From IMG/VR virus record IMGVR_UViG_3300005964_000044, positions 1-8,427 of that record: DNA of 8,427 nucleotides, one strand, 5' to 3'. The position numbers and the translations under genes were made by a program. Under the pieces are notes generated by a model. That model was given only the letters and a program-made list of their open reading frames with translations, ran no database searches and was not told where the DNA came from. Shown here one piece after another: positions 1,924-8,427 of the stretch (position 1 is the stretch's first letter; each line of letters starts with the position of its first letter).

Positions 1924-1951
1924 TAATTTTTTAATGTCATAATTTTAACTT
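1924..1951 (+). promoter_or_regulatory. Rudiviral TATA-like + GTC promoter for the 236-aa gene
   Basis: TAATTTTTTAATGTCATAATTTTAACTT lies just upstream of ATG 1965. A GTC just downstream of a TATA-like box is a known rudiviral promoter trait. A near copy precedes the convergent 64-aa gene. Confidence 0.5.
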
Positions 1952-2892: not shown

Positions 2893-2927
2893 AAATTTAA
2901 GTTGAAAAATGACAATTAAAAAATTAC

Positions 2928-3233
2928 TTAATAATATGTTTTCCAAATTAACAAAGCTATTAAATACCATAATTGTTCTTTTGGTATTTCGGCAAATATA
3001 CCGTTTTTAGCAAATTTATACGCATTATAAAGTCCTTCTATTTCATGTGTTATGTCTTCAATTTTCCATTTTTCAGGTTCCATAATTCCATTTTTTGTTT
3101 TAATTTCAATTGATGTTTTCATGTCCTTTATCCGTATTTTTAATTTATTATATTCATTATTTCCTTTCTTAACTTTTACTAATTGCATAGAAAAATTTAA
3201 TTCTAAATCCTTTACAACTTCTTCTTCTGTCAT
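2928..3233 (-). CDS. Hypothetical protein (~101 aa), candidate early/anti-defence gene
   Basis: Downstream of class-I promoter copy 1. ATG 3257 is too close to the TATA box to be transcribed. ATG 3233 (MTEEEV) has GGAGA upstream. Confidence 0.75.
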   Translation of the reverse strand: MTEEEVVKDLELNFSMQLVKVKKGNNEYNKLKIRIKDMKTSIEIKTKNGIMEPEKWKIEDITHEIEGLYNAYKFAKNGIFAEIPKEQLWYLIALLIWKTYY

Positions 3234-3263
3234 TTTTTCATCTCCATAAAAAAGCATATAATT

Positions 3264-3299
3264 TATGACAAATTTAAAAATGTCTCAAGTTTTTGATTT
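3264..3299 (-). promoter_or_regulatory. Class-I repeated early promoter, copy 1
   Basis: + strand tatgacaaatttaaaaatgtctcaagtttttgattt; the minus strand reads TTTAAA box then TTTGTCATA. Confidence 0.85.
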
Positions 3300-3360
3300 T
3301 CAAAATAATAAGTTAAGAAAAAGAAAAAAATTATAGATAAAAAACGATTAATTTAAAACT

Positions 3361-4083
3361 TTAATCAGCTTTATGACTTCTTGGCTTTGGATGCGTAATT
3401 AAATAATATTTATTTCCGCTTAGCATAACTGAATTTTCGCCATGATCCGGCGATTTCATAACAAATGTTGTAGAATTTTGAAGATATACTAAAAACGTAG
3501 AACCAGGCGTTGAAAATAAATCAGTAGCTAATACAGTATTTGAAAATTGTATTTCATGGTTGTAAATCGTTAGACTGTTTACATGATTTAAACTAAGATT
3601 TAAGTCATTATTTGGCGGTGGAACTTCATAGATTTCCAAATTTCCTTGATTAAACGTTAGATTAAATTGATATAGTTGACCTTTTACAAATATATCGTAA
3701 ATTTCTATTGAATAATTGCTATAACTAATAAGTAATTCTTTAGAACTAAGATTTAAAAGTTCTAGTTCTTTTAATATAATGTTTTTCATATCCTCTAAAC
3801 TTCTTGTAATTTTATTTCTTCTGTAAACTGATAGTATAGATGGTGCAGGTATGTAATATATACCTTTAGTTTCATCTAATTGACCATCAACATTTCTAAA
3901 ACATCCATTAAATGTTAGTCCTGACCTTGAAACATATTTTGAGCAATTTACATAATGATTTGAAATTAATGAAATTTTGGTAACTTGACCATTCATATGT
4001 TTTAACATAAAAACTTGTGGCAAATGAATTATTTGTTTTAAAATTTTAACTTCATACTTTTTTTGATCTTCAACTTGGGACAT
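3361..4083 (-). CDS. acrIIIB1: Anti-CRISPR AcrIIIB1 homolog (SIRV2 gp48-like; inhibitor of type III-B Cmr)
   Basis: Co-linear similarity to the recalled AcrIIIB1 sequence along its length: EVKxxKxxxxLPxVF, VNCxxYxSRSGxTxxGC, GIY, YSNYxIEIYDIxxKGxxYxFxL, QGxLxxYxVPxP, IYNH, TPG, SxDH, C-terminal HPxPR. The size (~240 aa) fits. Likely start is ATG 4083 after SD GGTG; GTG 4095 is the alternative. Confidence 0.9.
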   Translation of the reverse strand: MSQVEDQKKYEVKILKQIIHLPQVFMLKHMNGQVTKISLISNHYVNCSKYVSRSGLTFNGCFRNVDGQLDETKGIYYIPAPSILSVYRRNKITRSLEDMKNIILKELELLNLSSKELLISYSNYSIEIYDIFVKGQLYQFNLTFNQGNLEIYEVPPPNNDLNLSLNHVNSLTIYNHEIQFSNTVLATDLFSTPGSTFLVYLQNSTTFVMKSPDHGENSVMLSGNKYYLITHPKPRSHKAD

Positions 4084-4115
4084 ACGACCTGACACCTGTA
4101 AATGAAAATATGCTA

Positions 4116-4151
4116 TATGACAAATATAAAGTATTCGAAAAGTCTTGATTT
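4116..4151 (-). promoter_or_regulatory. Class-I repeated early promoter, copy 2 (acrIIIB1 promoter)
   Basis: tatgacaaatataaagtattcgaaaagtcttgattt, in the same 36-nt register as the other copies; it is the most diverged copy. Confidence 0.8.
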
Positions 4152-4169
4152 AAAAAAATATAAAAAGAA

Positions 4170-4454
4170 TTATTTTTCATAATATTCTATTGTAATTCTA
4201 TCAATTGGAAAATCATATCCTGTTATCATCTCTAAAGTTCTTTTTGGTTCCTTAACTAGTAAGCAAAATAATTCATCTAGATTTTGAACTCCAAAATCTT
4301 CATAAGTACTGCCACTAATATCTTTAACTTCTCTATTAATTTCAAAATCAATTAAACAATATTTACCTTCATAATCTGTAATAAAATAACTTTCTTCCTC
4401 AGATAAAACAATTCTAAAACCATAATTATATTTTTCAACTATTATATCAACCAT
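4170..4454 (-). CDS. Small acidic hypothetical protein (94 aa), candidate anti-defence protein
   Basis: SD GGTGA 8 nt before ATG. It starts 16 nt after the upstream stop, suggesting an operon. Very D/E/Y-rich and immediately upstream of acrIIIB1. Confidence 0.8.
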   Translation of the reverse strand: MVDIIVEKYNYGFRIVLSEEESYFITDYEGKYCLIDFEINREVKDISGSTYEDFGVQNLDELFCLLVKEPKRTLEMITGYDFPIDRITIEYYEK

Positions 4455-4470
4455 TTTTCCTTCACCTTGT

Positions 4471-4767
4471 TCAACAATTTATTATCCAATCTTTATTTCC
4501 ATATTTCTCTTCAAATTCTTTTATTTTTCTTTGTTTTAGTAATTTTATAATTTCTTTAACTTCTTCTTCAGAAATTTTCAGGCAATCCCTTCCATTATAA
4601 TGGCTAATTGTAATAGTAGACGTAACTTTGTCACGATATACTTTTTCAACTTCAACATAATATTCACCATCTTTTTTCACGATATAATAATAATAATCTT
4701 CAAACTTAGTTCCTACTTTTTTAGCGTAAATTATTTTTCTATTTTCTTGACTTGAACTTCCTGACAT
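4471..4767 (-). CDS. Small hypothetical protein (~98 aa), candidate anti-defence protein
   Basis: Downstream of promoter copy 3. The leader TTTACAGGTGAtggaatatATG mirrors the acrIIIB1 leader TTTACAGGTGtcaggtcgtATG, so the start is probably 4767 rather than GTG 4779. Confidence 0.8.
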   Translation of the reverse strand: MSGSSSQENRKIIYAKKVGTKFEDYYYYIVKKDGEYYVEVEKVYRDKVTSTITISHYNGRDCLKISEEEVKEIIKLLKQRKIKEFEEKYGNKDWIINC

Positions 4768-4799
4768 ATATTCCATCACCTGTAAAACGATTTATTCAT

Positions 4800-4835
4800 T
4801 ATGACAAATATAAAAATATCTTGAACTTTCGATTT
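4800..4835 (-). promoter_or_regulatory. Class-I repeated early promoter, copy 3
   Basis: tatgacaaatataaaaatatcttgaactttcgattt. Confidence 0.85.
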
Positions 4836-4856
4836 ATAAAAAAGAAAAAAATAATA

Positions 4857-5321
4857 TTAATTTTTGACAAATTCGATTTTATAATTTTTCTTTAAGAGAT
4901 AATACACTTTGAAATAGACAGGATCGGCATGACTGATAATAGATTCTGGTATCATCTTCAGTAAAGTAATAATATCTTCTGGAACATTATATTCATCACC
5001 ATAATATATGATTATTTTATTTTCTTTAACTTCAAACCTATGCCAAGAATATGCTTTTTTATAATCTATAATATAATTATGAGAACCATTATTCCATTCA
5101 TCATATGCTATATACTTTATATTATCATTATAAATAAAAATTACAGAACTAACATATCTATCATTTACGGTATTTCTTAATTTTTCAAATAGATATTCCT
5201 TTAACTCTTTATAATTTATTTTCTGCACTTCATCCCATAGCTGAATAATTTCATATCTTAAAATCTCTAATTGATTTATTATTTGATTTATTTTCTCTAA
5301 TTGTTGATCAAATCCACTCAT
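4857..5321 (-). CDS. Hypothetical protein (154 aa, N-terminal coiled coil), paralog A
   Basis: SD GGTGA before ATG and promoter copy 4 upstream. Visibly homologous to the 5496-5969 product. Confidence 0.85.
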   Translation of the reverse strand: MSGFDQQLEKINQIINQLEILRYEIIQLWDEVQKINYKELKEYLFEKLRNTVNDRYVSSVIFIYNDNIKYIAYDEWNNGSHNYIIDYKKAYSWHRFEVKENKIIIYYGDEYNVPEDIITLLKMIPESIISHADPVYFKVYYLLKKNYKIEFVKN

Positions 5322-5351
5322 CTTTACTTTTCACCAAATCAATTTACGTTA

Positions 5352-5387
5352 TATGACAAATTTAAAAATGTCTTTAGTTTTCGATTT
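5352..5387 (-). promoter_or_regulatory. Class-I repeated early promoter, copy 4
   Basis: tatgacaaatttaaaaatgtctttagttttcgattt. Confidence 0.85.
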
Positions 5388-5429
5388 ATCGATTTTTTTA
5401 AAAAATAGAATTATTATTTCAGATGTGAA

Positions 5430-5482
5430 AAAAATTATTGAAAAAAATAGAAGATAATGAACATGAAAATAGGAAGTTAAAA
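5430..5482. repeat. 53-bp exact direct repeat, copy 1 (terminator-like on the minus strand)
   Basis: aaaaattattgaaaaaaatagaagataatgaacatgaaaataggaagttaaaa is identical to 6078-6130. Confidence 0.95.
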
Positions 5483-5495
5483 AAGAAAGAAAAAA

Positions 5496-5969
5496 TTATT
5501 TTTGAACTTTAATGAAATTTATTTTATATCCTTTTTTCAATAGTAAATATAATCTCACAAATCCTTCATATGCCCAGCCAAGATTTGATTCTTTCATTAT
5601 TTTTAATAAATTCAATAAGTTATCTGAAAGATCATATTCCGAAAGATACATAAGATTTATAGTATATTTATCAGCATCAACATCATATCTATCCCAATAA
5701 TATATTTTATTCTTTATGATAAGTAAATTTCTTGAACCACTATGTTTTGGTTTAGATATATATTTTACATCATTATCATTCACAAAAATAACGCTATTTA
5801 CATCATTAACATTTGTAATTTCAAATAAATTATCAAAAAAATGTTTTATATCTTCCTCGTATATTGTTTCTGATATTTGTTTTTGTAACCTTTCTACTTC
5901 TTGTTTTAAATGTTCTAAACCATTAATTATTTCATCTATTTTTTCTAATTCAACTTTATTTTTATCCAT
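5496..5969 (-). CDS. Hypothetical protein (~157 aa, N-terminal coiled coil), paralog B
   Basis: The listed GTG at 5981 is part of the SD (GGTGAaagaaaaaATG), so the start is ATG 5969. Promoter copy 5 is upstream. Confidence 0.85.
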   Translation of the reverse strand: MDKNKVELEKIDEIINGLEHLKQEVERLQKQISETIYEEDIKHFFDNLFEITNVNDVNSVIFVNDNDVKYISKPKHSGSRNLLIIKNKIYYWDRYDVDADKYTINLMYLSEYDLSDNLLNLLKIMKESNLGWAYEGFVRLYLLLKKGYKINFIKVQK

Positions 5970-5999
5970 TTTTTCTTTCACCTAAAACAACATGTACTA

Positions 6000-6035
6000 T
6001 ATGACAAATTTAAAAATGTCTTTAGTTTTCGCTTT
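6000..6035 (-). promoter_or_regulatory. Class-I repeated early promoter, copy 5
   Basis: tatgacaaatttaaaaatgtctttagttttcgcttt; 5998-6031 is identical to 5350-5383. Confidence 0.85.
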
Positions 6036-6077
6036 ACGAATTTCCTAAAATGTTAGTATTAATATTTGAAACATGAG

Positions 6078-6130
6078 AAAAATTATTGAAAAAAATAGAA
6101 GATAATGAACATGAAAATAGGAAGTTAAAA
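6078..6130. repeat. 53-bp exact direct repeat, copy 2
   Basis: Identical to 5430-5482 at an offset of 648 bp, the same offset as promoter copies 4 and 5. Confidence 0.95.
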
Positions 6131-6178
6131 TATAAAATTATAAAAATAAAATAAAATTAAGGAAAAAAGATAAAAAAA

Positions 6179-6406
6179 TTATTGAGTTTGTTGAAATTGA
6201 ATTTGTTTTTGAACTAATGAATTGAATGTTTTAAAAGCGTATTCATAATCATAACCATGATAATAGAAATAACGGTTTGTTAATGATATTTTGAAAACTG
6301 CATAACGAGAATTTTGACAGCAAACACATTTCGCTAATACAACATTTCCAACTTGTTTTACTGTTTGAAATTCGTGATACCTTATCCCTATAACTTGAAA
6401 TCTCAT
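6179..6406 (-). CDS. Small hypothetical protein (~75 aa, CVCC motif)
   Basis: Class-II promoter upstream, AGGT before ATG 6406, and a long T-rich tract after the stop. Confidence 0.7.
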   Translation of the reverse strand: MRFQVIGIRYHEFQTVKQVGNVVLAKCVCCQNSRYAVFKISLTNRYFYYHGYDYEYAFKTFNSLVQKQIQFQQTQ

Positions 6407-6432: not shown

Positions 6433-6453
6433 CTTATATTTAAACTTTTCTCT
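6433..6453 (-). promoter_or_regulatory. Class-II promoter (BRE+TATA), copy 1
   Basis: Minus strand AGAGAAAAGTTTAAATATAAG; 21 bp identical to 6959-6979. Confidence 0.85.
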
Positions 6454-6541
6454 ATCTTTTTACCTTTTCATTTTTCGATTTCTTTAACGCTAAACATGTT
6501 AACTCTCAATTTGTGCATATCTTGAATTTATATTTAAAAAC

Positions 6542-6598
6542 TGAGAAAAATTAGACATAAAGATAGATAATAAGAAGAATGAAACTAAAAAGCTAAAA
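6542..6598. repeat. Diverged third copy of the intergenic 53-bp block
   Basis: 42/57 identical, ungapped, to 6074-6130 by manual alignment. A-richness inflates the identity. Confidence 0.55.
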
Positions 6599-6670
6599 GA
6601 TAAAGTTAGAAAAATAAAAATGAACTAACAAAGAGAAAAAAACGTTAACTTAATACAAATAAAAAAATTA

Positions 6671-6931
6671 TTAAGATTTAGGAAGTAATAGATAAACGTT
6701 ATCGCCTGCATTTATTTTCACAATAAAATTCTGCTTTAACCATGAAATATATTTTAAACCACAACCAGGTATTGGATTGTAGAAACATGTTGTTGAAACC
6801 TCATGCCATTCGTAATGTGGACAATCCTGAATTATCATTCCGCCTCCAACATCATATTTTTCCCCCAATCTAACATTACAATTTGAACAATAATATGTAG
6901 TAACATTTCCTTCTATTTCTCTTTTCAACAT
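6671..6931 (-). CDS. Small Cys-rich, putative zinc-binding protein (~86 aa)
   Basis: CSNC...CPH...C...C pattern. The listed 5' extension overlaps the promoter; SD GGTGA precedes ATG 6931. Confidence 0.75.
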   Translation of the reverse strand: MLKREIEGNVTTYYCSNCNVRLGEKYDVGGGMIIQDCPHYEWHEVSTTCFYNPIPGCGLKYISWLKQNFIVKINAGDNVYLLLPKS

Positions 6932-6958
6932 CTTTTCACCAATATACATATCACATTC

Positions 6959-6979
6959 CTTATATTTAAACTTTTCTCT
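6959..6979 (-). promoter_or_regulatory. Class-II promoter (BRE+TATA), copy 2
   Basis: Identical to 6433-6453. Confidence 0.85.
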
Positions 6980-7195
6980 CAATTTTTACATCTCTATCTT
7001 TCGCTCCTATTCTGCTAATTATCAATATAATGTATATGCCAAATCTGCTTCATGAATATTTTAACTTCCTAATTGCTTAATTTCATAATATACTAATCAT
7101 ATAATATGCTATCTTCTCAATTGCATAATTTCATAATTTATTAATTCTCCTTACAATTTCCTCCATAAAATACTGAGATAAATTCAAACTGTATA

Positions 7196-7276: not shown

Positions 7277-7660
7277 AAAATTTATGAATATACTAACTTC
7301 ACAATTACATAATTATATAATTATATATAACATAAAACATTTTATTATTTTAACTCTCAAACACGCAATTTTATAATTTTTAAGCTTCTCAACTTCCAAA
7401 GTTTTTAATTTATAAATTCACGTTTAGTTTTTCCACGCGACCAGCTTCCAAATCCAAAACTTTGTGAAAACAAGAACTTGGAACTGGAAAACTAAAGTCG
7501 CGGGTAAAAACGTAATTATATAATTAAAAAATTTGGGAATTGAGAAACTAAAGAATTATAAAATTTGCTAATTTGAAAAATAAAAAATAATAAAAAATAA
7601 AAATAAATAAAAATGGAGAACAGTCTACTCACTAATTCTATCAACTTTTGGCTCTTCAAG

Positions 7661-7676
7661 TATTTAAACTTTTCTC
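7661..7676 (-). promoter_or_regulatory. Class-II promoter core, copy 3 (no convincing gene downstream)
   Basis: GAGAAAAGTTTAAATA, 16 bp identical to copies 1 and 2. Confidence 0.6.
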
Positions 7677-7740
7677 CAAACTTTGAATTCTGATCAAACA
7701 AACTCCAAAAAATCCAACTGAATATAATATAATAATTTTG

Positions 7741-7884: not shown

Positions 7885-7971
7885 AGTTAGTAGTTATTAA
7901 TATCCACAAATTAACATTTATTACAAATTTCCAAAGTTTGAATTTGCAAATTTTATATTACAAATTTCACC

Positions 7972-8363
7972 AAATGACAGATTAATTGTAATTTAGGAAT
8001 TTAGAAAATTAGTATTTTTTATCATAGTTGTAAAATTATTTGGAAATGTAGAATTAATTGGAATTTAGGAATTTCCAATTTTTTAACTTTTTTGCAGAAA
8101 ATGATAGATTATTTCAAATTTAGGAAATTAGGAATTTACAATTTTTCTCATTTTTTGCACAATTTACGCAAAATGACAGATTAATTGGAATTTTGGAATT
8201 TTCAATTTTTTGCACCGCTCCAATTATTATTTGGAGGTGTAGAATTAATTGGAATTTCCAATTTATTGCGAAAGTTGGGAAATTTGCGAAAAAAACGAAA
8301 AAAACGAAAGAAATTGGAATTTTCAATTTTTTGCATTAGTTGTGAAATTTTCGCAGAAAATGA
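7972..8363. repeat. Rudiviral terminal (ITR) repeat region with AATTTAGG-type motifs
   Basis: 8117-8137 matches the conserved rudiviral terminal 21-mer AATTTAGGAATTTAGGAATTT at 20/21, and 7990-8010 at 19/21. Recurrent blocks: aaatgacagattaattg (7972, 8171), tgtagaattaattggaattt (8047, 8238), ttggaattttcaattttttgca (8193, 8314). Confidence 0.8.
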
Positions 8364-8427
8364 AAAAAACTACAGTTCCCTAATTAAGCCTTTGCAATTG
8401 CAGAATATTAACTAGGTATTTGATGTA

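What the first reader, a model, noticed from the sequence alone, without database searches (positions are those of the whole stretch)
2928..6035. Five-copy 36-bp promoter marks an anti-defence island with five uncharacterised candidate genes around acrIIIB1
Seen: the minus-strand consensus AAATCRAAA.T..AGAYATTTTTAWATTTGTCATA occurs in exact register at 3264, 4116, 4800, 5352 and 6000. Each copy sits before a short transcription unit that mostly ends in a T-tract, and one drives AcrIIIB1. Known: rudiviral anti-defence genes share conserved early regulatory sequences. Inference: the 101-, 94-, 98-, 154- and 157-aa proteins are candidate new anti-CRISPR or anti-defence factors.
Basis: partly seen in the sequence, partly recalled or inferred. 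Interest (0 to 1): 0.8.

Follow-up and report, generated by a model that had tools for sequence, protein, structure and literature searches.

The report
Shared promoter of rudiviral anti-defence cassettes
Five near-identical archaeal promoters head five small gene cassettes, one encoding the known anti-CRISPR AcrIIIB1, at the end of a Yellowstone-type Sulfolobus rod-virus genome; the principle and four of the five "new" genes were already catalogued in 2024, so this is mainly a new example of a known arrangement.

Summary
Five in-register copies of a 36-bp minus-strand motif (23/36 invariant columns) lie 30-32 nt before five start codons, and T-tracts end each unit. The window is a whole 8.4-kb IMG/VR contig, the right terminus of a Usarudivirus-like SIRV. 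The motif is an archaeal promoter: BRE/TATA, then the pan-rudiviral TTGTCATA ("GTC") element, plus an upstream AAATCGA box found only at genome termini. The 240-aa gene is an AcrIIIB1 homologue. Of the five "uncharacterised" genes, four belong to anti-defence gene (ADG) families already predicted by Bhoobalan-Chitty et al. 2024: ADG.01-like (101 aa), ADG.22 (94 aa) and ADG.18 (154 and 157 aa). Only the 98-aa gene is unlisted, with metagenome-only relatives. None of the five has been tested. The motif is not the published early consensus. That consensus also occurs in the window, at 6437-6467 and 6963-6993. Early timing is therefore not shown. Across 130 related loci the extended motif precedes AcrIIIB1, a validated viral antitoxin, a Dam-like methyltransferase and other small accessory genes, never core genes. 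Two promoter copies exactly bound a 684-bp cassette that SIRV9 lacks. Verdict: a new member of a known kind, of modest interest.

The parts
6000..6035 (-). Promoter copy 1 (AAAGCGA box, BRE-like AAAGACA, TATA TTTTTAAA, TTGTCATA), heading the 157-aa gene
   Evidence: (D3)
5496..5969 (-). 157-aa gene, a third divergent ADG.18 subfamily (37% to the 154-aa paralogue, 34% to SIRV5 gp52)
   Evidence: (phrog_12890)
5479..5495 (-). T-tract terminator region after the 157-aa gene
5352..5387 (-). Promoter copy 2, heading the 154-aa gene
4857..5321 (-). 154-aa gene, ADG.18 (86% to SIRV9 gp53, the ADG.18 reference). The AF2 model (pLDDT 89) has a long N-terminal helix plus an alpha/beta domain, with no fold relative outside the family
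4838..4851 (-). T-tracts after the 154-aa gene, directly abutting the next promoter box
4800..4835 (-). Promoter copy 3, heading the two-gene operon (98 aa then 94 aa). Its upstream half is orthologous to the SIRV9 AcrIIIB1 promoter
4471..4767 (-). 98-aa gene, a narrow metagenome-only family not in the published ADG catalogue. Mildly basic (pI 8.7), dN/dS 0.15-0.21
4170..4454 (-). 94-aa gene, ADG.22. Strongly acidic (pI 4.3, charge -11.5), second gene of the operon
4152..4166 (-). T-tracts after the 94-aa gene
4116..4151 (-). Promoter copy 4 (the most divergent, 23-26/36), heading the AcrIIIB1 homologue
3361..4083 (-). AcrIIIB1 (also called AcrIA4) homologue, 240 aa
   Evidence: 39%, E 2e-47 to SIRV2 gp48; 86% to SIRV9 gp52
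3318..3344 (-). T-tracts after the AcrIIIB1 gene
3264..3299 (-). Promoter copy 5, heading the 101-aa gene
2928..3233 (-). 101-aa gene, an ADG.01-like subfamily (98% to SIRV7 gp47, 36% to SIRV9 gp54, an ADG.01 member)
2905..2923 (-). T-tracts after the 101-aa gene
6437..6467 (-). Class I promoter (AGAGAAAAGTTTAAATA, the published early ADG-type core), heading the 75-aa gene at 6179-6406 (ADG.08-like).
   Evidence: (D8/D9)
6963..6993 (-). Class I promoter heading the 92-aa Cys-rich gene at 6671-6949 (36% to SIRV9 gp56, an ADG.12 member)
5410..5526 (-). Upstream intergenic module, repeated at 6058-6174 and 6526-6642. A 48-nt core is identical in two copies, and 57 nt are 93% identical to the region upstream of the SIRV9 gp03 promoter
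   Evidence: (D1, D2)

Best explanation
The five repeats are copies of one archaeal promoter module. Read on the minus strand, each contains an AAATCGA box, a purine-rich BRE-like stretch, a TATA box (TTTTTAAA or TTTATAT) and the rudivirus-specific TTGTCATA (GTC) element directly after the TATA box. The host TBP/TFB/RNA polymerase would start transcription a few bases downstream. That gives short leaders with a GGTG-type ribosome-binding site, and each transcript would stop at oligo-T tracts.

Each module heads a self-contained, moron-like cassette (promoter, one or two small genes, terminator) in the right-terminal accessory region of a Usarudivirus-like SIRV. The cassettes form a terminal regulon of anti-defence genes. 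It contains an AcrIIIB1/AcrIA4 homologue and members of the predicted families ADG.01, ADG.18 (two copies) and ADG.22, plus one unlisted 98-aa family.

The repeated promoters also serve as homology for recombination that inserts, deletes and duplicates cassettes.

Shown here: the repeats, their geometry, gene identities, terminal restriction, the families behind the motif elsewhere, and the promoter-bounded indel. Inferred: promoter activity, the start site, co-regulation through the AAATCGA box, timing, and anti-defence activity of the five proteins.
For: Repeat statistics and geometry.

The TATA+GTC architecture matches the virus-specific element that Kessler et al. 2004 described downstream of SIRV1/2 TATA boxes, as cited in PMC5569661.

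Gene identities.

Purifying selection (dN/dS 0.15-0.37) on the 98-, 94- and 154-aa genes and on AcrIIIB1.

Terminal restriction: the extended motif occurs in SIRV9 only within about 4 kb of either end, before gp03 (ADG.17 viral antitoxin, validated in PMC11065993), gp08 and gp53 (ADG.18) and gp52 (AcrIIIB1). SIRV2 has none.

Census: 130 IMG/VR and metagenome loci gave 118 distinct promoter instances. They head AcrIIIB1 (28), ADG.18 (16), ADG.06, ADG.17, ADG.22 and the 98-aa family (6 each), a Dam-like methyltransferase (Pfam PF05869, 33.3 bits against a cut-off of 28.1) and other small accessory proteins. No recognisable core gene is among them.

Promoter conservation: the two ADG.18 paralogues are 60% identical in coding DNA, but the 175 nt upstream are 81% identical and the core motif matches at 35/36.

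Shared box: an ATCGAAA box also lies upstream of the published-type promoters in these genomes. The same families sit behind either promoter type in different genomes.

Cassette indel: the SIRV9 spacer between gp53 and AcrIIIB1 matches the window's 154-to-98 spacer upstream of the 15-bp core (51/57). Downstream of the core it matches the window's AcrIIIB1 leader (38/38).
Against: There is no transcript or timing evidence for any Usarudivirus.

The TATA+GTC core also precedes about 16 annotated genes in the central part of SIRV9. PMC11065993 states that SIRV2 core genes and the remaining accessory genes use distinct, non-early promoters.

In SIRV2, AcrID1-family genes gp10 and gp46 carry TATA+TGTCATA, and that paper says five AcrID1 homologues lack an early promoter.

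ADG.17 and ADG.18 have low published motif prevalence (0.25).

No aca8 regulator gene is present on this contig, so the regulator is unknown.

None of ADG.01, ADG.18, ADG.22 or the 98-aa protein has a tested function, and no follow-up paper was found.

The census was seeded with the motif, so it cannot show how many anti-defence genes lack it.
Confidence: 0.75

Rival explanations
1. One reading: the motif is the conserved immediate-early anti-defence regulatory sequence itself, switched on at infection and later repressed by Aca8, so all five genes are early anti-CRISPR or anti-defence factors.
For: AcrIIIB1 is an early gene behind the consensus sequence in SIRV2. Usarudivirus AcrIIIB1 and SIRV9 and SIRV5 ADG.18 genes are flagged ADG in the paper's per-virus motif scans. 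An ATCGAAA box is shared with the published-type promoters. ADG.01 and ADG.22 sit behind the published-type promoter in SIRV V3.
Against: The core differs from the published consensus: it has no AGAGAAAG BRE, and it has a GTC element in place of the conserved sequence that follows the TATA box in the published type. The GTC core is the one used by genes in the central part of SIRV9. Published motif prevalence is only 0.25 for ADG.17 and ADG.18. There is no aca8 in the window. The paper itself suggests later timing for the antitoxin.
Confidence: 0.35
2. The copies are only the generic rudiviral promoter. They look alike because of recent tandem duplication or gene conversion, and there is no dedicated regulon or regulator.
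For: TATA+TGTCA is generic. The 154- and 157-aa genes are tandem paralogues 648 bp apart. Recombination between copies demonstrably occurs.
Against: The AAATCGA box and its spacing are absent from the central-region SIRV9 promoters found by the PWM. The PWM finds only four terminal sites scoring 25 or more; one further site, scoring 13.7, lies at 16015 inside gp37, well below the 22-25 cut-offs used for the census. The same module heads non-homologous genes in different genomes. The upstream DNA is far better conserved than the paralogous coding DNA (81% against 60%). Across AcrIIIB1 orthologues the box and the core are kept while the stretch between them varies.
Confidence: 0.15
3. The repeats are not promoters but recombination or replication signals, or ends of a small mobile element.
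For: They bound a cassette indel, and they lie in the recombinogenic terminal region.
Against: All copies have one orientation, and each sits at a fixed 30-32 nt before a start codon with an SD-like element. Each contains a canonical TATA box. There are no terminal inverted repeats or target duplications around the cassettes. No recombinase gene is present in the window.
Confidence: 0.03

Closest known systems
Virus-specific consensus regulatory sequences preceding early anti-defence genes at the termini of Rudiviridae (Bhoobalan-Chitty et al., Nat Commun 2024, PMC11065993)
   Same: Several small single genes at a linear genome terminus share a promoter plus flanking sequence. AcrIIIB1 is among them. 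The families ADG.01, ADG.08, ADG.18 and ADG.22 were predicted this way, including in Usarudiviruses.
   Different: The published core is a purine-rich BRE (AGAGAAAG) plus TTTAWATA without a GTC element. Here the core is TATA plus TTGTCATA with an AAATCGA box 14 nt upstream of the TATA-containing core. Both types coexist in the window. The 98-aa family and the 101-aa subfamily (SIRV7 gp47) are not in the paper's tables. No aca8 is on this contig.
Rudiviral 'GTC' promoter element directly downstream of the TATA box (Kessler et al. 2004, as cited in PMC5569661 and PMC1635249)
   Same: All five copies have TATA immediately followed by TTGTCATA, as do most SIRV9 promoters.
   Different: The generic element is found throughout the genome. 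The five copies add a conserved upstream box and longer shared flanks that occur only at termini.
Bacterial phage acr-aca operons and phage morons
   Same: Small counter-defence genes lie behind strong, shared, presumably repressible promoters. Each is a self-contained unit of promoter, gene and terminator that is gained and lost as a block.
   Different: This is archaeal TBP/TFB promoter architecture. There is no aca-type HTH gene in the units, most units hold a single gene, and regulation is untested.
SIRV2 gp47-gp48 (AcrIA3 plus AcrIIIB1/AcrIA4) neighbourhood (bioRxiv 10.1101/2024.04.02.587611)
   Same: AcrIIIB1 is flanked by other small accessory genes. The authors predicted that AcrIIIB1 homologues are flanked by further inhibitors.
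   Different: No gp47 (ADG.09) homologue is here. The flanking genes are ADG.01-like, ADG.22 and the 98-aa gene.

Membership tests
AcrIIIB1 (SIRV2 gp48) family | Full-length sequence homology to SIRV2 gp48 | tested here: met
   39% identity over 255 columns, E 2e-47. 86% to SIRV9 gp52, which is listed as AcrIIIB1 in PMC11065993.
AcrIIIB1 (SIRV2 gp48) family | Binds Cmr complexes and inhibits type III-B (and I-A) interference | not testable with these tools
   Known for SIRV2 gp48 only.
Published early ADG regulatory sequence (PMC11065993) | Strong core promoter: purine-rich BRE (AGAGAAAG-like) directly upstream of TTTAWATA | tested here: not met
   The five copies have AAAGACA, AAGATAT or CGAATAC before TTTTTAAA or TTTATAT, followed by TTGTCATA. 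The published type is present elsewhere in the window at 6437-6467 and 6963-6993.
Published early ADG regulatory sequence (PMC11065993) | Flanking sequence shared by several single small genes of the same genome, near the termini | tested here: met
   Five copies in 2.8 kb of a terminal contig. In SIRV9 the motif is terminal only.
Published early ADG regulatory sequence (PMC11065993) | Immediate-early expression | not testable with these tools
   No transcript data are available for Usarudiviruses.
Published early ADG regulatory sequence (PMC11065993) | aca8 regulator gene in the genome | tested here: inconclusive
   No aca8 in the window (best tblastn E 0.34). The contig covers only one terminus. 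aca8 is present in the SIRV4, 5, 7, 9 and 11 loci.
Rudiviral GTC-type promoter (Kessler 2004) | TATA box followed directly by GTC | tested here: met
   TTTGTCATA is invariant in all five copies. The same architecture precedes about 16 annotated genes in the central part of SIRV9.
ADG.18 | Homology to the reference YP_009362605 (SIRV9 gp53) | tested here: met
   154-aa protein: 86%. 157-aa protein: 38%, E 9e-21. Both hit phrog_12890. The fold model matches only the SIRV6 family member (TM 0.91).
ADG.22 | Homology to the listed SIRV V3 ADG.22 protein | tested here: met
   85% identity over 94 aa at the coordinates listed in Supplementary Data 1. The reported fusion of this domain to AcrIIIB1 in a Thermofilum MAG was not re-tested.
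ADG.01 | Homology to listed members (for example SIRV9 gp54) | tested here: met
   36% over 89 aa, E 2e-10. Its 98% twin, SIRV7 gp47, is not itself in the paper's tables.

The most novel reading that the evidence does not exclude
The extended GTC-type promoter (AAATCGA box plus TATA plus TTGTCATA) may define a second terminal anti-defence regulon in Usarudiviruses. It would be separate in regulator and timing from the Aca8/AGAGAAAG early regulon. Its promoter copies would double as crossover points for shuffling cassettes between co-infecting viruses. Within it, the 98-aa protein would found a new anti-defence or regulatory family that works with the acidic ADG.22 protein next to AcrIIIB1.
Probability: 0.3. 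Interest if true: 0.55.

Novelty: new member of a known kind. Interest (0 to 1): 0.3.

Why it matters
The finding confirms on an uncultured Yellowstone rudivirus that shared regulatory DNA is a practical handle for finding archaeal anti-defence genes.

It also adds three modest points. First, Usarudiviruses use two promoter types for such genes, and one of them is built on the generic viral GTC core. Motif-only pipelines therefore score these genes poorly: published prevalence is 0.25 for ADG.17 and ADG.18. Second, a promoter-bounded 684-bp indel shows how cassettes are gained or lost. Third, it gives a short list of untested families tightly linked to AcrIIIB1: the 98-aa protein, ADG.22, ADG.18 (whose confident predicted fold has no relatives) and a 185-201-aa family with an acidic tail.

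None of this changes the current picture, but it gives concrete targets for bench work.

Tried and rejected
Pfam, PHROGs, NCBIfam and PADLOC scans of all island proteins gave only unknown-function PHROGs and sub-threshold noise. A PADLOC hit of the 98-aa protein to C3a216 (E 0.001) is matched by only 4 of 13 family members, so I rejected it.

Sequence and profile searches of the PDB found nothing significant. A weak hit of the ADG.18 N-terminus to the archaeal RelB antitoxin 1wmi_B (E 0.17) is only a lead.

The 98-aa model (pLDDT 69) resembles PUR-repeat/PC4-type beta-beta-beta-beta-alpha folds only weakly (E 0.06, TM 0.40). That does not support a function. The model was no longer on the server for the viral-library search.

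The ADG.18 model (pLDDT 89) has no fold match in the PDB (best E 0.93) or in BFVD outside its own family.

BLAST found no similarity of the 101-aa protein to SIRV2 gp47 (AcrIA3), despite the equivalent position.

Two of my first degenerate patterns were mis-specified and found too few sites. I replaced them with a scripted consensus and shuffle test.

Kessler 2004 could not be read directly and is cited through a review.

A GACA...TGTC dyad around the TATA box is present in only 3 of the 5 copies and is not conserved in relatives, so I dropped it as an operator candidate.

Rfam gave no match.


Full report
**Observation**

The window is AT-rich (about 25% G+C). Pairwise identity is 23-35 of 36, and 23 columns are invariant. 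Five sites share at least 24/36 identity with copy 5352, against a mean of 0.31 (maximum 2) in 100 dinucleotide-preserving shuffles. A PWM made from the copies finds no further site in the window.

**What the window is**

The window is identical to a whole 8427-nt IMG/VR contig, IMGVR_UViG_3300005964_000044. Its best matches are the right ends of the Yellowstone rudiviruses SIRV4-11 and isolates V3, V60 and V65, at about 85% identity over about half the length. These viruses belong to the genus Usarudivirus.

The left part (1-2675) holds conserved genes on the + strand: a permease, a tRNA-ribosyltransferase and a 236-aa protein. The right end (about 7960-8427) consists of short ITR-type repeats, with an 81% match to the ARV1 terminus. 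The island therefore lies in the terminal accessory region of a linear rudiviral genome.

**Anatomy of the units**

Read 5' to 3' on the minus strand, each copy is: AAATCGA box, 14 nt ending in a purine-rich BRE-like stretch, TATA box (TTTTTAAA or TTTATAT), TTGTCATA. The end of TTGTCATA lies 30-32 nt before an ATG that has GGTG or GGAG 8-10 nt upstream. T5-T7 tracts begin 0-16 nt after the last stop codon of every unit. There is none between the 98-aa and 94-aa genes, which are 16 nt apart and form an operon.

That gives five units:
- promoter 6000 to the 157-aa gene
- promoter 5352 to the 154-aa gene
- promoter 4800 to the 98-aa and 94-aa genes
- promoter 4116 to the 240-aa gene
- promoter 3264 to the 101-aa gene

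The start site (about 5-15 nt after TTGTCATA) and termination at oligo-T are inferred from general knowledge of Sulfolobus transcription. They are not shown here.

**Gene identities**

- The 240-aa protein is an AcrIIIB1 homologue: 39% identical to SIRV2 gp48 (E 2e-47) and 86% to SIRV9 gp52. SIRV2 gp48 has since also been named AcrIA4.
- The 154-aa protein is 86% identical to SIRV9 gp53, the reference of family ADG.18 in Bhoobalan-Chitty et al. 2024 (PMC11065993).
- The 157-aa protein is a divergent paralogue, 34-38% identical to the other ADG.18 subfamilies.
- The 94-aa protein is 85% identical to the SIRV V3 protein listed as ADG.22. The paper reports that this domain is fused to AcrIIIB1 in a Thermofilum MAG. 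I did not re-test that.
- The 101-aa protein is 98% identical to SIRV7 gp47 and 36% (E 2e-10) to SIRV9 gp54, an ADG.01 member. SIRV7 gp47 itself does not appear in the paper's tables.
- The 98-aa protein has no match in 50,697 phage and virus records. It has 13 close relatives, all from metagenomes, and only 7 representatives among 1.84 billion protein clusters.

dN/dS of 0.15-0.37 against orthologues shows that the 98-, 94-, 154- and 240-aa ORFs are real genes.

**Relation to the published regulatory sequence**

PMC11065993 showed that SIRV2 early genes, including acrIIIB1, acrID1 and aca8, share a consensus built on a purine-rich BRE and TTTAWATA. The authors used virus-specific versions of it to predict 354 anti-defence genes.

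Extracting upstream regions from SIRV2, SIRV7, SIRV9, V3 and the window shows two promoter types.
- Type I is the published kind: ...GATAGAGAAA(A/G)NTTTAWATA followed by a conserved (T/A)GAGTTT..CATA. In the window it precedes only the 75- and 92-aa genes, and a third, orphan copy lies at 7661-7691.
This is the GTC element that Kessler et al. 2004 found in most SIRV1/2 promoters (cited in PMC5569661).

In SIRV9, TATA+TGTCA precedes about 16 annotated genes in the central part of the genome, and the window's 236-aa gene has it too (1927-1941).

What is specific is the AAATCGA box at fixed spacing, plus longer flanks. With these included, the PWM finds only four sites in the 36-kb SIRV9 genome that score 25 or more, all within about 4 kb of an end, and none in SIRV2. 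One further site scores 13.7, inside gp37 at 16015, well below the cut-offs of 22 and 25 that I used for the census.

An ATCGAAA box also occurs upstream of type I promoters, about 16 nt further from the TATA box. The same families swap promoter type between genomes. ADG.01 and ADG.22 are type I in V3 and type II here. AcrIIIB1 is type I in SIRV2 and type II in all Usarudiviruses examined.

**Census of the regulon**

Pattern scans of IMG/VR and of JGI metagenomes, followed by PWM filtering, gave 118 distinct promoter instances in 130 loci, all from low-G+C rudivirus-like contigs. The genes behind them are:
- AcrIIIB1 (28)
- ADG.18 (16)
- a 185-201-aa family with an acidic tail (10)
- a 105-aa protein with a weak, sub-threshold C2H2 zinc-finger hit (19.2 bits against a cut-off of 27) (6)
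- the 98-aa family (6)
- ADG.06 (6)
- ADG.17, the Phd-like viral antitoxin validated in PMC11065993
- ADG.22 (6)
- the 101-aa type (3)
- a Dam-like DNA methyltransferase (2; Pfam score above its gathering cut-off)
- singletons

No recognisable core gene appears. This supports an anti-defence regulon, with the caveat that the sample was seeded with the motif. The window holds more copies (five) than any other contig found.

**Promoters as cassette boundaries**

In SIRV9, ADG.18 (gp53) is followed directly by AcrIIIB1. Its intergenic spacer is a chimera of two window spacers. Upstream of the 15-bp core TTTATATTTGTCATA, it is 51/57 identical to the window's 154-to-98 spacer, against 31/59 to the 94-to-AcrIIIB1 spacer. 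Downstream of the core, it is 38/38 identical to the window's AcrIIIB1 leader, against 22/38 to the 98-aa leader. So the 684-bp cassette holding the 98- and 94-aa genes was gained or lost by recombination between two promoter copies.

The order 154, 98, 94, AcrIIIB1 recurs in the related metagenome contigs that are long enough to show it. In one lineage ADG.22 is duplicated. In one distant contig the 98-aa homologue is followed by an unrelated gene.

The two ADG.18 paralogues are 60% identical in coding DNA, but the 175 nt upstream are 81% identical, including a block of 48 identical nucleotides. That block is also 93% conserved upstream of the SIRV9 antitoxin promoter. The regulatory module is therefore about 130 nt long. 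Either selection or gene conversion keeps it more conserved than the genes it heads.

**Proteins**

- The 94-aa protein is strongly acidic (pI 4.3), and the 98-aa protein is mildly basic (pI 8.7).
- The 98-aa model is of moderate confidence (pLDDT 69) and only weakly resembles PUR/PC4-like folds.
- The ADG.18 model is confident (pLDDT 89): a 50-residue N-terminal helix plus an alpha/beta domain. It has no structural relative in the PDB or BFVD other than its own family.
- No family library gives any of these proteins a function.

**Mechanism, with levels of support**

- Shown: the repeated module, its fixed geometry relative to the genes, terminal restriction, association with two validated anti-defence families, and recombination at the repeats.
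- Well-founded inference: the repeats are TBP/TFB promoters of moron-like cassettes.
- Weaker inference: the AAATCGA box is an operator for a common regulator (Aca8 or another protein), and the five proteins act against host defences.
- Not supported either way: early timing. The core resembles the promoters that PMC11065993 calls non-early. That paper also records low motif prevalence (0.25) for ADG.17 and ADG.18 and suggests later action for the antitoxin.

**Verdict**

It also equates the motif with the published early sequence, which it is not. No later paper characterising ADG.01, ADG.18 or ADG.22 was found. I file this as a new member of a known kind. The small new elements are the 98-aa family, a third ADG.18 subfamily, the two-promoter-type picture and the promoter-bounded indel.

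Noticed in passing
window 7360-7570: A 211-nt near-perfect palindrome with arms of about 100 nt. The RNA fold is -75 kcal/mol against -33 for shuffles (z -11.7). It contains the only G+C-rich patch of the terminal region, has no Rfam match, and is only weakly conserved (67%) in three related contigs.
   Followed up: partly
window 7661-7691 (- strand): A third copy of the published-type BRE/TATA (GGAGAAAAGTTTAAATA) with no credible ORF downstream. It points through T-tracts into the palindrome. In SIRV2 and SIRV7 the equivalent terminal slot holds aca8, which is absent here.
   Followed up: partly
window 5410-5526, 6058-6174, 6526-6642: A 117-nt intergenic module repeated three times between the terminator T-tracts and the next promoter. 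A 48-nt core is identical in two copies, and 57 nt are 93% identical to SIRV9 1298-1354, upstream of the antitoxin promoter. Its function is unknown.
   Followed up: partly
window 1927-1941 (+ strand): A generic TATA+GTC promoter (TTTTTTAATGTCATA) lies 23 nt before the conserved 236-aa gene (phrog_6678, 94% to SIRV7 gp46) and lacks the AAATCGA box. It serves as an internal control showing that the GTC core alone is not island-specific.
   Followed up: yes
L060:546-971 (-), and one further contig: A 141-aa Dam-like DNA N6-adenine methyltransferase (PF05869, 33.3 bits against a cut-off of 28.1) sits behind the same extended promoter. It is a plausible anti-restriction cassette.
   Followed up: partly
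L030:6759-7364 (-) (SIRV4), L017 and eight other instances: A 185-201-aa family ending in a run of Asp/Glu is the third most frequent gene behind the extended promoter. It has no Pfam hit, and I did not look for it in the published tables.
   Followed up: no
L047:3189-3473 and 3510-3821: In one metagenomic lineage ADG.22 is tandemly duplicated (43% identity) between the 98-aa gene and AcrIIIB1.
   Followed up: no
L003:3440-3769 (SIRV7 gp47) and window 2928-3257: The annotated 109-aa start overlaps the promoter's predicted transcribed leader. The SD-like element supports the internal ATG, giving 101 aa. The same applies to the 244/240-, 102/98- and 161/157-aa ORFs.
   Followed up: partly
window 7960-8390: ITR-type short direct repeats (AATTGGAATTT..CAATTTTTTGCA units, repeat families D5, D7 and D18), with an 81% match to the ARV1 terminus.
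   Followed up: no
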